A stretch of DNA of 63,827 nucleotides, the filler included, from Hyphochytrium catenoides (Eukaryota; Protista; Hyphochytriomycota): NCBI GenBank assembly GCA_900088475.1. It is 10 parts of 10 records of this genome, joined end to end, with 100 filler letters (N's around TTAATTAATTAA, not from the genome) between each part and the next. Parts side by side here need not be neighbours in the genome. Positions count along the whole stretch, not along the records: positions 62,759 to 63,827 come from FLMG01003549.1; 9 more parts are not named here. The stretch is one strand, 5' to 3'. The position numbers were made by a program, and so were the translations under genes. This document shows positions 4,919 through 63,827 of the stretch, piece by piece. How positions within the stretch are numbered: the first letter of the stretch is position 1; the number at the start of each line of letters is the position of its first letter. The notes under the pieces were generated by a model. That model saw only the letters and a program-made list of their open reading frames with translations. It made no database searches and had not been told where the DNA came from.

Positions 4919-7900
4919 TCAAACCTGCTCAGTCTGCCATCCAATGGAGTGCAAAAGCTTCTGTAGTTTGGCCTTTTCTCTGGCTGACTGACGGCCATTG
5001 TGTCCACAGTTCAATGGGATCAGATACCCTAACTCTGGATCTGCGGACATCTTTCCTGTCCTTTCAAGCTCTTCCCGTCCCTTCTTTTGTGTTTGCAATC
5101 TCTCGCTAAAGGTATCTACCAGGTAAGAGATAAACCCAACTAAGAAGGCGACCTCTGGATCGCCATTGAGAGCCGGATTGCTGGCAAGTACCTAGCGCGA
5201 GGATGCGGCAAAGCTGAGCAAGGCAGGCACTAGAAGAGTAATAGCACTTCAATCCGACAAATGCAACTTCTAATAACATAGAGGCAAGCGACAGCAGGTC
5301 CCCAGGGCAAGTGCAGGTGAGAGATACAGGGCCACGACTACAAATAAAGCGGGAGCTAGTCTTCGCCAAAGTACAGTGAGTTTTGGCAAAAGATGACAAC
5401 GTCAGAGCTTACCTGTCCTAGTTTGCCCTCTGCTTTCACGAGGCCTACTGGCACGATTCTCGTGGCAACATGCTGATCTACCAGGCACTCTGACCCACAG
5501 TTCGCCAGCACTTGCGGACCCCATGTTAGAAGCGAACAGCACCAGGAACGTACACCGTCTAGCCCTCGACCTAAGGCTTGACCAAGAATCTGCCCACAGT
5601 GACCGTCACAAGCCACTAGAGCCATCCAAAGCTGTGTGAGGAGACAGTAGGATCCTTCAGCTGAAGTTATACCAAACAGGAGATCATAACCGCTAAGGGG
5701 AAGGACCAACCTGCACCATATCCGAAGAGGGACCCTGAGGGTCGTGCACCTTCTCACCAAGCTTCCGTAGTAGCACATAAAAGGCTTGGATATGCTCTTC
5801 TCTGAGGGCTATACCTGGGAAGATCAAGAAAGTCCTTGAGACATCGATGGCAACTTTTCATTTAATGATATAAGAAGACTTCAAGCCGAGAGAGTGCTTG
5901 CCACAATGTAAGCCCAGACTTCCATCGAGAAGACGCTTTCGAGCCTCTAGGAGATAATGGTTGTGAAAAGTTCAAGCGGTCGAAAAGAAGCGGAGAAAGG
6001 CAACGTACCTCTTACTGGAGGCATTAGCCCGTTAAGATCTCTCAGCTTAGGATCGAGTGGTCTGTTATATTCGCAATTATAGCCAAGCTCCTTGATCATG
6101 GCAATTCCCGCTTTTAGTGACGAAGGGTCGGTAACGATCTAAGAGATATAATGGAGTGTCTAAGCCTTACGATATCAGTTTTAGAGCCACTATCCAGAGC
6201 GTGAGACTCACCTCGTCTTCTGGGTCACAGCAGACGATCTTTAAACATCTCGCTTCCAGGTACCTGAATCCGATTCCCATGGGCACAACTACTTAGCAGC
6301 GTGGATATCAACACATACCCCTTGGCGTGGATTCTTGTCTCACCTTTCCACATTATCCGATTGCCAAAAAGTTGCCCATTTAAGGCCCGCTCCCGCCCAA
6401 GGGGCAATCAACTTCCTCGCGACTGCCGGCAAGTTGGCGAACGTCCTATCGGCAACGACAAAATCGACATCGCAGTACCTACACGATAAGAAGAAGATCG
6501 AGACGACGTTGGGCCTATCGTCAGAGACTGAAGTGGACAGATGGTCATCTTTATGAGTTTGATAGTTTGAATTAACCACCGGTGGACGCTCCTATACTCC
6601 CTCTTTGCCGTTTATAGTGATACAAGCCTTACCTCGCCAAATATATGGCCACCATTCCTCCTATGGACTCTCCGTGCACTCCTATAGACTTCATGCCCCT
6701 AGAACTTCGGAGATACTCGACAACCGCCTCCCCGTCTCTGTTATTGGCGTCGGGAGAAGGAGATCCGGTACTCCTAACGTAGCTTCCAGACACTAGAGTA
6801 AGTTATCAAGTTGTTGCCGTTGCCAATCGCTCCCCTCTCTCCTTTTGATTGTCTGCACACAAAAAGCGCAATCTCGTAACCTCATCAACCCGTCTCGTGA
6901 TGCCTGGCTTTATCTTACTCTTCCTAATTCTCCTCTACCTTACCCCCTGTAGTTCCAGACAAACACATTGCAGCCGAGCTCTGTGTAGAACTGCACCCAG
7001 TCCGACTGAATAGGCTGGCACTCATAGATTCCAGCGTTGGGATTACAGAGAATCACAATACGGGAGGACGGAGAAGCGGAAGCTCCTTTGCTCGACGTGG
7101 GAGGTATGAACATCCCGTCAATCCTGTTCTTATCTTTCCCTACAATGACAATCTCCTCGCCGCTAAACCTGCATGAGAAGGAAAGAAGAACGTTAACCTC
7201 TTAGTTGGACTCGTACATCTCTCATCATACCCTCATACACCTCCCGTCAAATCCTCCTTTTGATTGACTACATCAACTCTCATCTTCTTACGGCTGTTGA
7301 GTTCCTTTATCGTATCCGTTCCACTTTCATAGATTCGCAGTTTTTTCTCTCAGCGCCTTATAGGCTTTCACTTTCTTCACTTTTCCTCTCTCTCTTGTCT
7401 CTCTCTCTTTCTCTGTCAGCATGGAACCGGCTTTCCTGTTATTGTTATGCCGTCTATGTATTCTATATCCTTCTCTTCACAAACCCAAACTATAGTAGCT
7501 GACGCACCGGTTTGCCAAGTCTGCGCGCATAAGGTTCAGATTTGCGGCGCCTGCAGAGGAAGGTCGAGGGCAGTCTTAGAGCACGAATAAGAAGACAATG
7601 AAAGCGACCAGAGCGAGCACAGAGAGCCACACGGGAACTCCAGATAGGCTGGCTCGTAGCGTCATAGAATCGGCAGCAGCTAGACCAAAATTTATTCTAC
7701 CTGAAAGCGGGAAGCGAGAATGGTAGCACTGGTAAACAAGCCCCAACGGTCCCGAGAAGGGTCTTTCGCCCTCTCCCAAAAGGTCAGAAGAGAACGCTAG
7801 CTTCTTCGCTGAGGTTTCCAAGGCCTTAATGCTAGGATAGTAGCTCTCGCCGTGAGAGTTTGAGCTCGAAGTGCCCTTCTCCTCTGCCGCGCGTGCAGTT

Positions 7901-9278
7901 AAACGCAGCCTCTCCGTCTCGAACTGCGAAATAGTTGCATGGTCTAGAGATGCTAACAGAGGTTCGAGAGCCTTTATACCTTGCACCACTTCGAGGAGAA
8001 GTTCGCTCAGCTGCAGCCAACGAAGGTGGAGGTTAGACAGGATCATGGTGGCAAGTTGACAATTGAGGGAGGACAGCGTTGATGCTAGCAAGAGACGTCT
8101 CTCAGCATAGAGAACGCAGGTGTCAAACGTCAGGTTTCAGTGAATTCGGCCCAATTCAGTAAACTATTGAAGAGGACCACAAGGACATCACAAGGCTCTT
8201 CGCCCTTACACTATGTCCGGCCTCTGTGATAGTGCCTCTTGTGTCTTGAAGAGAGAGAGCAGCCTGAAGTGGCGCCAAGTGCTCCTCTTGACAATAGTTT
8301 ACGTCCTAAAACCGTGCACATATTGTCACGTTAGAAGTCTTTTGGAAAGCTGTACTAGGACCGTAGGGGTGAAGCGAAGGACATTGGGCTGACGGAGCGA
8401 GCAACGGAGATATTGTCACCTGGAGTGCATTCCCGAACTCAAACTTTCTCCCGTTTTCCTGGTCAGCTGCCAGCAGCATCTGACACAAGTCGAGGAGAGC
8501 CTCTGAGGACACCATCAGACGTTTATTGAGCATGCGGGCGTACTCATGCTCAATATCCCTAATGACCATAGGCATAGCTCCGGGATAGGTAAGGGATCGA
8601 GCCAAAACAAAAATCGCCGTATAGCAGCCTGTGATCGAGAAAGAGAAAAAGCAACGTTTGATGAGTTGCTGTTCACTCTCCATAGACAAGGCCGGTCTCC
8701 TCCCAGCCCAAGAAGTAGTCATAGGGAACTCGCACCAGAGCGCTGGTTGTAAGATTGGAGAGGAGATCAGAGTCGAAACACCACGACAAAAGTTGACGGA
8801 TGGGTCAATCGAGGCAACAGTCTAGGAACAAGATAAGGTAACGAGAGTTAATGCTAAGCCATGGTGACAGGAGCAAACGACCAGGTGGAAGTGGGGCAGT
8901 GAAGTATCTATAGGGCAAACCTAGGAGTATGAGGGCCAAGAGACCAGGCTGCGTGAGGACGCTAGCTAGCCAACGGAAGGTAACCCATGTGGTGGCAAAG
9001 AGAGCTTGAAGCACAAGAACCACCATCGCAGTTAATTTTGGGTTCACGATGAGGATGCGAAAAGGGAGCCACAATTGCTCTGCTAGGTAGACGGGGTCCC
9101 CGGTTTGCTCGTCCTCTGGCCTCTTCCCTCTCTCGCAAGCCCGTGCCTGGGGTGCCATTTGGGCTTCTGAACTATCACCTCTCTGCTGGACCATGCATTC
9201 TTCTAGGGCTCGGGGACTTGTATCCTCCACAAGTGGCTGGAAAGCAGGCGCGGTCAAGTTGACTCGCACATCAGCCAT
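4919..9278 (-). CDS. Membrane-anchored alpha/beta hydrolase (ABHD/BEM46-like), many short exons
   Basis: Hand-spliced minus-strand exons: ILCNPNAGIYE...WVQFYTELGCNVFVWNYRG (~6945-7168), GVHGESIGG nucleophile elbow (~6650-6680), VVADRTFANL, CDPEDE|IVTDPSSLKAGIA, and C-terminal LIPLNCGHNG with stop at 4919. Hydrophobic N-terminal exons correspond to ORFs 8805-9302, 8306-8722 and 7576-8091. Start codon and some exon borders are approximate. Confidence 0.8.
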
Positions 9279-62247: not shown

Positions 62248-62758
62248 TGGTAACGACGAAAGCTTTTCGAAGGACGAGAAGAAGAAGAGAAGAGTAAAGG
62301 CTGTCAGAGAAGAAGATCATACTACGCCCATCTTCGTGGTTCTCATCATTTCACGCAATGGAAGAAGATCGTTCTCTCTTCTTTCCTATGATGTCACCCT
62401 ACATCCAATCCCCTGCTTCCTCTCTCGTGCTTCCTCTCCTTCTCTCTCTCTCTGCTTATCTTCTCGCTTTGTCACTAACTAGGTGTTTTCGATATATCAT
62501 TCTTTGTACCAGTCTGCTTCTTTGGTCCAGGTTGTTCTTTATCTGCTGCACTCTTGCTCATATGGATATCAGTAGGGCACCCCTTTCCCTTGTTATTCTT
62601 TTCCTTCCTCTTCCTAGATCTAGGAACAATCTCTCTTTGTCTCTTTCTCTCTCTCTCTNNNNNNNNNNNNNNNNNNNNNNNNNNNNNNNNNNNNNNNNNN
62701 NNTTAATTAATTAANNNNNNNNNNNNNNNNNNNNNNNNNNNNNNNNNNNNNNNNNNNN

Positions 62759-63827
62759 ACGATCCGTCCTCTTGTCAGAGTTGCCATCCCATTGCGCACA
62801 ATCAAGGCCCAATTCATCGCACCGCCGTTTTAGATCCGCTTTCAGCGCCAAGAGCGGAACAATGACCACTGTGGTTCTCGCCTTTTCTTTCCTTGCAGCC
62901 TCTATAAACGCCGGGAGCATAAAGATCAAGCTCTTCCCTCCTCCTGTCGGAAGAATTACCAGGAGATCACCGCTCTTACTGTCCATCACTTGCGCTACTG
63001 CGTATGCTTGCAGTGGTGACTTGAAGCGAGGCGGCGACGTCGGTTCTTCACTACTGCCCGGTGTCAAAAACTTTTGCAGAGCCTCCGCCACTGAGTGCGG
63101 CAAGGACATCGAAGTTTCCGGAATAAGCCGTACAGCTGCAAATGAGAGGAAAAACAGATCTATAAGCATTAACCATGTTTCAATCAATAACCATCATAAG
63201 GATCAGTTCCTACCTGTGGGAAACTGGAAATGGCGAGGATAGACATTGACAGTCTTCTGAATAATTCCTCGAATAGGAATCTTATGTGGGACGCCGCCTT
63301 CACATGCCGTGACGCCTTCTATCTGTTGGTAACGACCACTAGTATCACTCATCATGCGGCTGGAAAGTGGAGCTCGGACACATGGCGGTGCAGGAGATTC
63401 GTCCTGTCTTGGCATTACAAGTTCATGCCATGCCAAGGAACAGCGATGGTACCTTTCTCTTTGATCGGTACCAAGATTTGGGAAGTATGAGCCGCCCATC
63501 CTCGCATAGATTGCGTTCGCTGTTCGTGAACTATGGCCCCGCTGTCCATCCTCAATAGAAGTGGCTTGAGGGGACGCTTGGGCTACTTCAAAGGCATTTA
63601 CACCAAGATGAGCTCGTGAAAATGCTGTGGCGACATGCCGATACTGGCCAAACGAAATTTTAAGCTCAGCTTGAGAAAAGCTTCCTCGAAGGACCCGCCG
63701 GATGGCGTCTGCCGTCATCTGCCTTCCTCTTGTGACAAATAGATAGCTACCATGTACTCTCGATGCGTCACGGTTTCCATAGAGGACACTTGCTGCCAGT
63801 CTAGGCACAAGAAGAAGAGGAATACGT
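62759..63827 (-). CDS. Tyrosine-recombinase-like domain fused to RecQ-type SF2 helicase (telomere-linked-helicase-like), truncated at both ends
   Basis: Upstream exon has GQYRHVATAF...DGQRGHSSRTANAIYAR. A 78-nt GT-AG intron at 63136-63213 removes the only in-frame stop. Downstream exon has FKSPLQ (motif 0), LLVILPTGGGKSLIFMLPA (Walker A) and TVVIVPLLAL (motif Ia). Confidence 0.8.

What the first reader, a model, noticed from the sequence alone, without database searches (positions are those of the whole stretch)
62759..63827. Spliced tyrosine-recombinase-like / RecQ helicase fusion: candidate YR-helicase mobile element
Seen: the two minus-strand ORFs (63203-63808 and 62711-63187) share a frame and are separated by a clean 78-nt intron (GTAGG...TTTGCAG), so they form one protein. 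The N-terminal part carries YRHVAT ... QRGHSSRTANAIY and the C-terminal part carries RecQ motifs 0, I and Ia. Known: tyrosine recombinases use H-x-x-R, (L)GH and a Tyr about 9-10 residues after that His, which matches the spacing here. Similar architectures occur in fungal telomere-linked helicases, which are usually annotated only as helicases. Inference: this may be an autonomous excision/integration element pairing a YR with its own helicase, in an apparently non-fungal host. The His of HxxR is not conserved here, and the first catalytic Arg would lie outside the window.
Basis: partly seen in the sequence, partly recalled or inferred. Interest (0 to 1): 0.78.

Follow-up and report, generated by a model that had tools for sequence, protein, structure and literature searches.

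The report
Telomere-linked helicase with tyrosine-recombinase domain
This 1-kb piece is a fragment of a fungal-type "telomere-linked helicase" gene, and the family's long-unexplained domain ahead of the helicase folds like a DNA-cutting tyrosine recombinase and keeps its active-site residues, so these chromosome-end genes probably cut and rejoin DNA as well as unwind it.

Summary
On the minus strand there is one reading frame, open to both edges of the piece. It is broken only by a 78-nt GT..AG intron (63213-63136), which holds the frame's only two stops and is AT-rich.

Exon 2 is the start of a RecQ-like helicase (motifs 0, I, Ia). Exon 1 matches no Pfam, NCBIfam, PHROG or PDB sequence. It does belong to a family of 50 proteins and 107 metagenome loci with a conserved R..E / K / R / H / Y pattern.

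A confident AlphaFold model of a complete homolog matches only tyrosine recombinases and type IB topoisomerases (XerA Z 11.2; top 29 chains). In 61 of 64 loci the helicase directly follows this domain.

Nine contigs end in telomere repeats, always downstream of the gene. Full ORFs read OrsD/C2H2, then the YR-like domain, then DEAD and Helicase_C. That is the published telomere-linked helicase (TLH) architecture and orientation.

So this is a divergent TLH-family fragment, and the "TLH domain" is a tyrosine-recombinase catalytic domain. I found no paper saying so. Autonomous mobility and a non-fungal host are not shown.

The parts
63407..63826 (-). Exon 1, residues 1-140. This is the C-terminal two thirds of a tyrosine-recombinase-fold catalytic domain (the 'TLH domain'), cut at its 5' side by the edge of the piece. 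It holds Arg II (R63, 63640-63638), His III (H98, 63535-63533), the Tyr nucleophile (Y107, 63508-63506) and a conserved Trp (W133).
   Evidence: R, H and Y are invariant in homologs; the homolog model matches the YR/topo IB fold. Arg I and Lys lie upstream of 63826, outside the piece.
63214..63406 (-). Exon 1, residues 141-204 plus the first base of the split codon. This is a poorly conserved linker between the YR-like domain and the helicase.
   Evidence: similarity to the nearest homolog P0001 continues to ..YPR..FPT and stops exactly at the exon end; linker length fits that of continuous homologs.
63136..63213 (-). Intron of 78 nt, GTAGGA...pyrimidine tract...TTTGCAG, phase 1.
   Evidence: it holds the only two in-frame stops of the piece, and its GC is 0.35 against 0.50 and 0.53 in the exons. 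P0001 loses similarity at the same codon (FPT|G). No RNA evidence.
62759..63135 (-). Exon 2 (two bases of the split codon plus 125 codons), cut at its 3' side by the edge of the piece. It holds the linker end and the start of the RecQ-like SF2 helicase core.
   Evidence: Pfam DEAD 2.5e-11 and ResIII 1e-4. PDB RecQ5, RecQ, RecQ1, RecQ4 and BLM at 3.8e-5 to 3e-3.
62984..63025 (-). Helicase motif 0 (F37-M50 of exon 2, FKSPLQ...).
   Evidence: it aligns with the same block in L089 (FKSEEQ...).
62909..62953 (-). Helicase motif I / Walker A (LPTGGGKSLIFMLPA).
62831..62872 (-). Helicase motif Ia (TVVIVPLLALKADL).

Best explanation
The piece is an internal fragment of one spliced gene of the telomere-linked helicase (TLH) family. 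This family sits in the subtelomeres of fungi and some other eukaryotes. Its full architecture is an N-terminal OrsD/C2H2 zinc-finger region, then a roughly 260-residue 'TLH domain', then a RecQ-like helicase.

Shown here: the TLH domain is a tyrosine-recombinase / type IB topoisomerase catalytic domain that keeps Arg-(Glu)-Lys-Arg-His-Tyr. The window copy keeps the three of these residues that fall inside the piece.

Inferred mechanism: the Tyr attacks a phosphodiester to form a 3'-phosphotyrosyl link, and the nick can be resealed or transferred to another strand. The fused 3'-to-5' RecQ motor unwinds or branch-migrates the same DNA. One polypeptide can therefore make, move and resolve recombination joints.

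Inferred role: copying or holding the TLH-bearing subtelomere block at chromosome ends, whether for the cell's benefit or the element's own.
For: Gene model: (one frame; stops only in the AT-rich GT..AG intron).

Fusion:
- More than 24 homologous proteins carry both parts in one ORF, in the same order. The gap between the two matches is 40-270 aa. From the exon coordinates, without joining, the window's would be about 100 if spliced, against 74-111 in seven continuous ORFs.
- 61 of 64 loci that were fetched by a YR motif alone have the helicase directly downstream.

YR fold:
- AlphaFold2 model of homolog P0023 with a 51-sequence alignment: pLDDT 81, pTM 0.78.
- VIA-align against 48,161 chains: ranks 1-29 are all YR or topo IB superfamily. 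Examples: XerA Z 11.2 at 3.3 A over 164 aa; XerD; XerH; Cre 9.0; topo IB 7.7; Ndc10; Flp.
- Foldseek ranks 1-27 are all YRs.
- Language-model neighbours with names are ResT/TelK, NDC10_II, DUF3435 and Phage_integrase.

Active site: in 28 full domains found by plain phmmer, Arg I, Glu, Lys, Arg II, His III and Tyr are each 28/28, at about 24% median identity.

Selection: dN/dS of the domain is 0.04-0.22 in 8 of 11 diverged pairs.

TLH identity:
- 9 of 107 family contigs end in telomere arrays, always downstream of the gene and 0.5-5.4 kb from the stop. One copy is truncated inside the gene and capped by a telomere.
- This is the orientation, distance range and truncation described for M. oryzae TLH (PMC1635262).
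- Telomere-adjacent ORFs of 1628-2077 aa read OrsD ... DEAD, Helicase_C.
- This matches the C2H2 / TLH domain / RecQ layout (bioRxiv 10.1101/2024.02.27.582403) and the Fusarium subtelomeric 1454-aa DEAD+Helicase_C+OrsD protein (bioRxiv 10.1101/2023.02.05.527183).
Against: - No sequence-level link to any known YR family: Pfam, PHROGs and NCBIfam on 27 members and a PDB profile search are all blank. Foldseek E-values are only 0.035 and up.
- The fold was modelled on a homolog about 28% identical to the window, not on the window fragment. The fragment's own single-sequence model was useless (pLDDT 34). The Tyr-bearing helix of the good model has only pLDDT 57-66.
- The His of HxxR is absent in the window (G60) and in most of the family.
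- Arg I and Lys of this copy lie outside the piece, so its intactness is unknown.
- TLH identity rests on architecture, telomere linkage and orientation. I could not align a named TLH protein.
- The window contig itself shows no telomere.
- No biochemical activity is known for this domain.
Confidence: 0.78

Rival explanations
1. This is an autonomous YR-helicase mobile element. The YR excises and integrates a discrete element, for example through a circular intermediate, and the helicase assists. Telomere ends would be its preferred target.
For: - The catalytic residues are kept under purifying selection across very divergent copies.
- The family is multi-copy, with diverged paralogs on different contigs of one project, tandem copies (L071, L085), and internal as well as terminal locations (L052, L029, L108).
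- Orientation toward the telomere is uniform in 8 independent lineages.
- Distribution is patchy, including a TTTAGGG-telomere organism (L012).
- M. oryzae TLH regions have discrete boundaries at repeats with telomere-like motifs (PMC1635262).
Against: - I found no terminal repeats, target-site duplications, empty sites or circular junctions.
- Similarity between paralogs ends about where the ORF ends, which coding constraint alone explains.
- Subtelomeric recombination or break-induced replication explains copy spread and preserved orientation without transposition.
- Nothing can be said about the window's own 1-kb contig.
Confidence: 0.28
2. The YR-like domain is a catalytically dead, domesticated DNA-binding module, as in Ndc10, DUF3504/ZMYM and QRICH1. 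The protein would then act only as a helicase.
For: - The HxxR His is missing in most members.
- Ndc10 and QRICH1 appear among the structural matches.
- There is no sequence similarity to active YR families.
Against: - Arg I, Lys, Arg II, His III and Tyr are each 28/28 in unbiased homologs at about 24% identity. Domesticated YR folds have lost such residues (established knowledge).
- The best structural matches are active Xer and Cre enzymes, at Z 9-11 against 5-6 for Ndc10 and QRICH1.
Confidence: 0.1
3. The domain works as a type IB topoisomerase-like swivel that only relieves the torsion made by the fused helicase. This would be a single-chain analogue of the RecQ-Top3 pairing or of reverse gyrase, without site-specific recombination.
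For: - The conserved set R-K-R-H-Y without His II is exactly the topo IB pentad (established knowledge of vaccinia topo IB).
- Topo IB chains score Z 6-7.7.
- RecQ helicases normally work with a topoisomerase (established knowledge).
Against: - Xer and Cre recombinases match better than any topo IB.
- The conserved Glu after Arg I (RxxE) is a Xer/Cre-type feature.
- The zinc-finger N-terminus suggests site recognition.
Confidence: 0.2
4. The motif match is chance, or the two ORFs are unrelated neighbouring genes or a dead pseudogene fragment.
For: - The piece is only 1069 nt.
- No RNA evidence for splicing.
- The donor GTAGGA is not the commonest fungal donor.
Against: - E 1.7e-24 to 1e-3 for 50 relatives among 1.84 billion proteins.
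- Collinear fusion in dozens of single ORFs.
- No stop or frameshift in either exon.
Confidence: 0.03

Closest known systems
Telomere-linked RecQ helicases (TLH): M. oryzae TLH1, S. pombe Tlh1/Tlh2, U. maydis UTASa, Metarhizium TAH1, F. oxysporum TLH, Monosiga TLH
   Same: Same order of parts: C2H2/OrsD, then a conserved domain of about 250 aa, then a RecQ-like helicase. Proteins are 1450-2100 aa. The gene lies 0.5-5.5 kb from the telomere repeats with its 3' end toward the telomere. Copies can be truncated and healed by telomeres. The genes are multi-copy.
   Different: The window copy is very divergent: at most 50% identity to anything found, and about 30% to most members. It has an intron between the two domains. 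The papers I could read call the upstream block a 'TLH domain' of unknown function; here it is read as a YR catalytic domain. Direct alignment to a named TLH protein was not possible.
Xer/Cre/lambda-Int tyrosine recombinases (Pfam Phage_integrase, PF00589)
   Same: Catalytic-domain fold (Z 9-11). Arg I in a G..R..E block, Lys after a beta hairpin, Arg II followed by His (RH), and G-H-S...Y with 9 residues from His to Tyr, as in XerD.
   Different: No detectable sequence-profile similarity. The His of HxxR is usually replaced. There are large helical insertions. The domain is fused to zinc fingers and a helicase, and it is eukaryotic and subtelomeric.
Eukaryotic YR elements: Cryptons, and Starship 'Captain' (DUF3435, PF11917)
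   Same: Fungal proteins with a YR fold, often with zinc-finger DNA-binding parts. DUF3435 clusters are weak language-model neighbours (0.78-0.85).
   Different: No member hits PF11917. Cryptons and Captains carry no helicase and are not telomere-linked. No element termini are known here.
Type IB topoisomerases and telomere resolvases (ResT/TelK)
   Same: Same superfamily fold. The same minimal R-K-R-H-Y pentad without His II. ResT/TelK is the top named language-model neighbour (0.88). They act at DNA ends or telomeres.
   Different: Structural scores are lower than for Xer and Cre (topo IB Z 6-7.7; TelK appears only in the weak Foldseek list). No hairpin telomeres are involved; these loci end in ordinary TTAGGG arrays.
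Helitron RepHel (HUH nuclease fused to Pif1 helicase)
   Same: One polypeptide joins a tyrosine-based DNA-nicking domain to a helicase. It is an analogy for how a nick-and-unwind machine can move DNA.
   Different: The folds are unrelated, and the polarity is opposite: a 5'-phosphotyrosine with a 5'-to-3' motor in Helitrons, against a predicted 3'-phosphotyrosine with a 3'-to-5' RecQ motor here. This is analogy only.

Membership tests
Tyrosine recombinase / topo IB superfamily | Catalytic-domain fold | tested here: met
   Model of the complete homolog P0023 (pLDDT 81). All of the top 29 VIA-align chains and the top 27 Foldseek chains are YR or topo IB. The test was on the family, not on the window fragment itself, whose own model failed.
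Tyrosine recombinase / topo IB superfamily | Tyr nucleophile, with His/Trp III 9-10 residues before it | tested here: met
   Window H98 and Y107, spacing 9. Both are invariant in 50 homologs.
Tyrosine recombinase / topo IB superfamily | Arg II | tested here: met
   Window R63, invariant in homologs.
Tyrosine recombinase / topo IB superfamily | Arg I and the beta-hairpin Lys | not testable with these tools
   Both lie upstream of the piece's edge. In the family they are 67/67 each (G..R..E block and Y.K block).
Tyrosine recombinase / topo IB superfamily | His II of HxxR | tested here: not met
   The window has G60 at R minus 3. In the family this position is variable (S, A, Q, L...), with His in only 7 of 67. 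Topo IB also lacks this His, so the feature does not define the superfamily.
Tyrosine recombinase / topo IB superfamily | Sequence-profile match (PF00589 or related) | tested here: not met
   No hit at E<=10 in 27 members. PHROGs, NCBIfam and the PDB profile search are blank.
RecQ-family SF2 helicase | Motifs 0, I and Ia | tested here: met
RecQ-family SF2 helicase | Motifs II-VI, Helicase_C, RecQ zinc-binding/RQC | not testable with these tools
   These lie outside the piece. Homologs have DEAD plus Helicase_C. RecQ_Zn_bind was seen in only 1 of 52.
Telomere-linked helicase (TLH) family | Conserved 'TLH domain' directly upstream of a RecQ-like helicase in one protein | tested here: met
   By position and architecture. 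There was no direct alignment to a named TLH protein, because none could be fetched.
Telomere-linked helicase (TLH) family | N-terminal C2H2 motifs | not testable with these tools
   These lie outside the piece. OrsD (PF12013) is present in full-length relatives.
Telomere-linked helicase (TLH) family | Location next to telomere repeats, 3' end toward the telomere | tested here: inconclusive
   The window contig is 1 kb with no flank. In the family, 9 of 107 contigs end in telomere arrays and all 9 are oriented this way, as in M. oryzae.
Crypton / Starship Captain (DUF3435) | PF11917 or Crypton YR sequence signature; element termini | tested here: not met
   No PF11917 hit in any member. There are only weak language-model neighbours, and no termini were found.

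The most novel reading that the evidence does not exclude
TLH blocks are a so-far unrecognised class of eukaryotic tyrosine-recombinase elements that live at chromosome ends. A zinc-finger-guided YR nicks or exchanges strands at subtelomeric or telomere-like sites. Its own RecQ motor then peels or branch-migrates the DNA, so the block copies itself onto other, eroded ends. This would be a mirror image of the Helitron nuclease-helicase logic (3'-phosphotyrosine with a 3'-to-5' motor). It would explain why TLH genes are multi-copy, uniformly oriented, patchily distributed from fungi to choanoflagellates, and dispensable for normal telomere function.
Probability: 0.25. Interest if true: 0.85.

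Novelty: new member of a known kind. Interest (0 to 1): 0.64.

Why it matters
TLH genes have been known at fungal chromosome ends since 1998, and their conserved 'TLH domain' since 2009. [quoted passage not shown]

Reading the domain as a tyrosine-recombinase catalytic centre with an invariant R-K-R-H-Y set gives the family a concrete chemistry that can be tested: a covalent 3'-phosphotyrosyl DNA intermediate coupled to RecQ unwinding. It turns 'why is a helicase parked at telomeres?' into experiments that can be done in S. pombe, such as a Tyr-to-Phe mutant, trapping of the adduct, and survivor formation without telomerase.

It would add a fifth kind of eukaryotic YR-bearing repeat beside DIRS, Ngaro, Cryptons and Starships. 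It also bears on how subtelomeres are copied between chromosome ends.

The window piece itself is only a divergent fragment of this family. The value lies in the family-level reading that it pointed to.

Tried and rejected
Searches and models that gave nothing:
- Pfam, PHROGs, NCBIfam and PDB sequence or profile searches of exon 1 and of 27 family members. None returned a YR family.
- Word-index protein search with exon 1. It was blank because of its length window.
- Single-sequence AlphaFold of exon 1: pLDDT 34, unusable.
- The search for related loci with the wide alignment. With window+P0001 in prokaryote genomes and viral contigs it found no relatives.
- A second word-index search with the N-part of a long homolog: 5 hits and no informative names. 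I therefore could not align a named TLH. The third costly search was not spent.
- Repeat search for element ends around an internal copy (L111): nothing convincing.
- blastn and tblastn of the piece against the 119 loci: no close relative, so the full contig was not recovered.

Rejected hits:
- P0002 and P0003, as low-complexity artefacts.
- 12 of the 119 motif-matched loci, as not family.

Literature: five full-text searches found no paper joining TLH, the TLH domain or subtelomeric helicases with tyrosine recombinase, integrase or Crypton. The key 2009 paper is not held.

Step left out: the two exons were never joined.

Full report
**1. What is in the piece**

The real sequence runs from 62759 to 63827. 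On the minus strand one frame is open from the upper edge (63826) to the lower edge (62759). It has only two stops, and both lie in a 78-nt stretch (63213-63136) that begins GTAGGA and ends with a pyrimidine tract and TTTGCAG. The other two frames have 22 and 18 stops. The 78-nt stretch has GC 0.35, against 0.50 and 0.53 on either side.

It is a phase-1 intron: G at 63214 plus CT at 63135-63134. Exon 1 (window:63215-63826:-, 204 codons) and exon 2 (window:62759-63133:-, 125 codons) were searched separately by reference.

**2. Exon 2**

Pfam gives DEAD at 2.5e-11 and ResIII at 1e-4. The best solved relatives are RecQ5, bacterial RecQ, RecQ1, RecQ4 and BLM (3.8e-5 to 3e-3). Motif 0 (F37-M50), Walker A (LPTGGGKS) and motif Ia (TVVIVPLLAL) are present. 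The rest of the helicase lies beyond the edge of the piece.

**3. Exon 1 has no named relative, but it has a family**

Pfam, the PDB sequences and the word-index protein search gave nothing. The exhaustive phmmer scan of 1.84 billion representatives gave 52 hits at E<=1e-3, the best being P0001 at 1.7e-24 and 50% identity. Two of the 52 (P0002, P0003) are low-complexity artefacts.

Aligned, the family shows these blocks in order: G..R..E, then Y.K, then YL...RP, LFV..G, YRH.A.AF, D.QAGHS..TA...YAR and S..WH.LL. The window's R63, H98 and Y107 are invariant in every homolog. Q95, S130 and W133 are nearly so.

The His-to-Tyr spacing is 9, as in XerD (my knowledge of that family). The residue at the HxxR His position is G60. 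In the family this position is variable, with His in 7 of 67.

**4. The fold**

A single-sequence model of exon 1 was useless (pLDDT 34). I therefore modelled P0023. It is a 447-aa homolog that contains the whole region, and it is about 28% identical to the window over the shared part. With a 51-row alignment that includes the window, the model reached pLDDT 81.2 and pTM 0.78.

VIA-align against 48,161 representative chains put only tyrosine recombinases and type IB topoisomerases in ranks 1-29:
- archaeal XerA: Z 11.2, 3.3 A over 164 residues
- a second XerA and XerD: Z 9.7
- XerH 9.3; Brujita integrase 9.2; Cre 9.0; bacterial topo IB 7.7
- integron and Tn1549 integrases, Ndc10, Flp, SSV1 and lambda integrases, and QRICH1

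All eight chains with Z>=8 are recombinases. Foldseek's first 27 rows are also all recombinases, but with weak E-values (0.035 and up). The protein-language-model neighbours of exon 1 that carry a name are ResT/TelK, NDC10_II, DUF3435 and Phage_integrase (0.85-0.88; leads only).

Caveats: the model is of a homolog; the helix carrying the Tyr has pLDDT 57-66; and no sequence-profile method links the family to a known YR family.

**5. Active-site conservation and selection**

In 28 complete domains from the unbiased protein search, Arg I, the following Glu, Lys, Arg II, His III and Tyr are each 28/28. In 39 more domains from metagenome loci they are 38-39/39. Median pairwise identity is 24%. The loci were fetched with a pattern that contains the His and Tyr, so for those two residues only the 28 protein rows count as evidence.

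dN/dS of the domain between diverged copies is 0.04-0.22 in 8 of 11 pairs and 0.4-0.85 in the other three. Domesticated, inactive YR folds such as Ndc10 and DUF3504 have lost these residues (established knowledge), so a dead DNA-binding module is unlikely.

**6. The fusion is the rule**

At least 24 of the protein hits carry an exon-1-like and an exon-2-like match in one ORF, in that order. In seven continuous ORFs the distance from the end of the YR-like core to helicase motif 0 is 74-111 residues. From the exon coordinates, without joining, the window's would be about 95 if spliced.

Of the 64 with at least 1.5 kb downstream of the domain, 61 have the helicase right after it on the same strand.

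The nearest homolog, P0001, loses similarity to the window exactly at ..YPR..FPT|G. That is what a shared intron position read through by a gene caller would give.

**7. Which family this is**

Nine of the 107 contigs end in telomere arrays. Eight carry TTAGGG, and L012 carries TTTAGGG. In all nine the array lies downstream of the gene's 3' end, 0.5-5.4 kb from the stop. In L015 the array abuts a copy broken inside the YR-like domain. L081 and L102 are the same sequence, so this makes eight independent cases.

The telomere-adjacent ORFs of 1628-2077 aa read OrsD (a C2H2-type module), then about 600 aa without a Pfam match that contain the YR-like domain, then DEAD and Helicase_C. This is the published layout of telomere-linked helicases:
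- Two N-terminal C2H2 motifs, a roughly 250-aa 'TLH domain' just upstream of the helicase, and RecQ motifs (bioRxiv 10.1101/2024.02.27.582403).
- A 1454-aa Fusarium subtelomeric protein with DEAD, Helicase_C and OrsD (bioRxiv 10.1101/2023.02.05.527183).
- In M. oryzae, the 3' end of TLH faces the telomere at distances from 5.5 kb down to truncation inside the ORF (PMC1635262).

The identification therefore rests on architecture, position, telomere linkage and orientation. I put it at about 85-90%.

The YR-like block is the only conserved block between OrsD and the helicase, so it must be the 'TLH domain'.

**8. How it most likely works**

Shown: a YR/topo IB fold with an intact R-(E)-K-R-H-Y set, covalently fused to a RecQ-like motor, in a telomere-linked, multi-copy family under purifying selection.

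Inferred from the known chemistry of the superfamily: the Tyr forms a 3'-phosphotyrosyl bond, and the free 5'-OH can reseal the nick or attack a partner strand. RecQ motors move 3' to 5' and branch-migrate junctions, and they normally need a topoisomerase partner. A single chain that can make, move and resolve joints fits a role in copying the TLH block between chromosome ends.

It is not decided whether this is strand exchange at specific sites (recombinase), a mere swivel (topoisomerase-like; the pentad without His II is the topo IB set), or true transposition.

I found both terminal and internal copies (L052 lies 40-47 kb into a 90-kb contig), tandem diverged copies (L071) and paralogs at 87-89% identity. 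I found no element ends, target duplications or empty sites.

**9. Novelty**

The gene is a new, very divergent member of a known family. What may be new is the reading of the TLH domain. Five full-text searches found no paper that joins TLH, the TLH domain or subtelomeric helicases with tyrosine recombinase, integrase or Crypton. The 2024 TLH preprint does not contain the word recombinase. [quoted passage not shown] No Pfam model covers the domain.

The library lacks most subscription journals, including the 2009 paper that defined the domain, so prior notice cannot be excluded.

**10. Host**

The piece carries no host information. Its nearest language-model clusters are Ascomycota, and nothing related was found in prokaryote genomes or viral contigs. 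The piece is not human-like.

Noticed in passing
L090:1-8724 (Ga0181457_10100): The whole 8.7-kb contig is bracketed by a perfect 1643-nt inverted repeat (1-1643 against 7082-8724), around a TLH-like gene on the minus strand. This is either an assembly artefact or a real long terminal inverted repeat.
   Followed up: partly
L012:4169-10017 (end of the 179-kb contig Ga0102593_1000151): A full OrsD + YR-like + DEAD + Helicase_C ORF lies 600 nt from a TTTAGGG (not TTAGGG) telomere array. The family therefore also sits at chromosome ends of an organism with the plant/alga-type repeat.
   Followed up: partly
L015:3-481: A CCCTAA array directly abuts a copy broken inside the YR-like domain. This is a chromosome end truncated within the gene and healed by a new telomere, as reported for M. 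oryzae telomere 1.
   Followed up: yes
L071:4633-10749; L085:1330-10546; L007:3552-7543: L071 carries two diverged copies in tandem on one contig (88.6% identity). L085 has two family hits. L007 has a 2-kb internal direct duplication at 90% identity.
   Followed up: partly
L052 (39.9-47.4 kb of a 90-kb contig), L029, L108: These family copies lie well inside long contigs, so they are not at an assembled end. Paralogs from the same project (L029, L052/L111, L114, L078) are 87-89% identical over about the length of the ORF only.
   Followed up: partly
Protein atlas neighbours of P0032 residues 1-930: Large Ascomycota clusters (621 and 71 members) of roughly 910-930-aa 'hypothetical proteins' carry OrsD but no DEAD. 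They look like the N-terminal part of TLH and may be helicase-less OrsD + YR-like proteins.
   Followed up: no
L049:5281-5664, L092:5125-5454, L005:2392-2610: These are the three loci, out of 64, where no helicase follows the YR-like domain. They may be degenerate or rearranged copies.
   Followed up: no
L027, L058, L051, L013, L076, L077, L060 (ORF pieces of about 170-200 aa): In many loci the C-terminal part of the YR-like domain sits in a short separate ORF piece, with the helicase in another. Introns around this exon therefore seem common in part of the family, as in the window.
   Followed up: no
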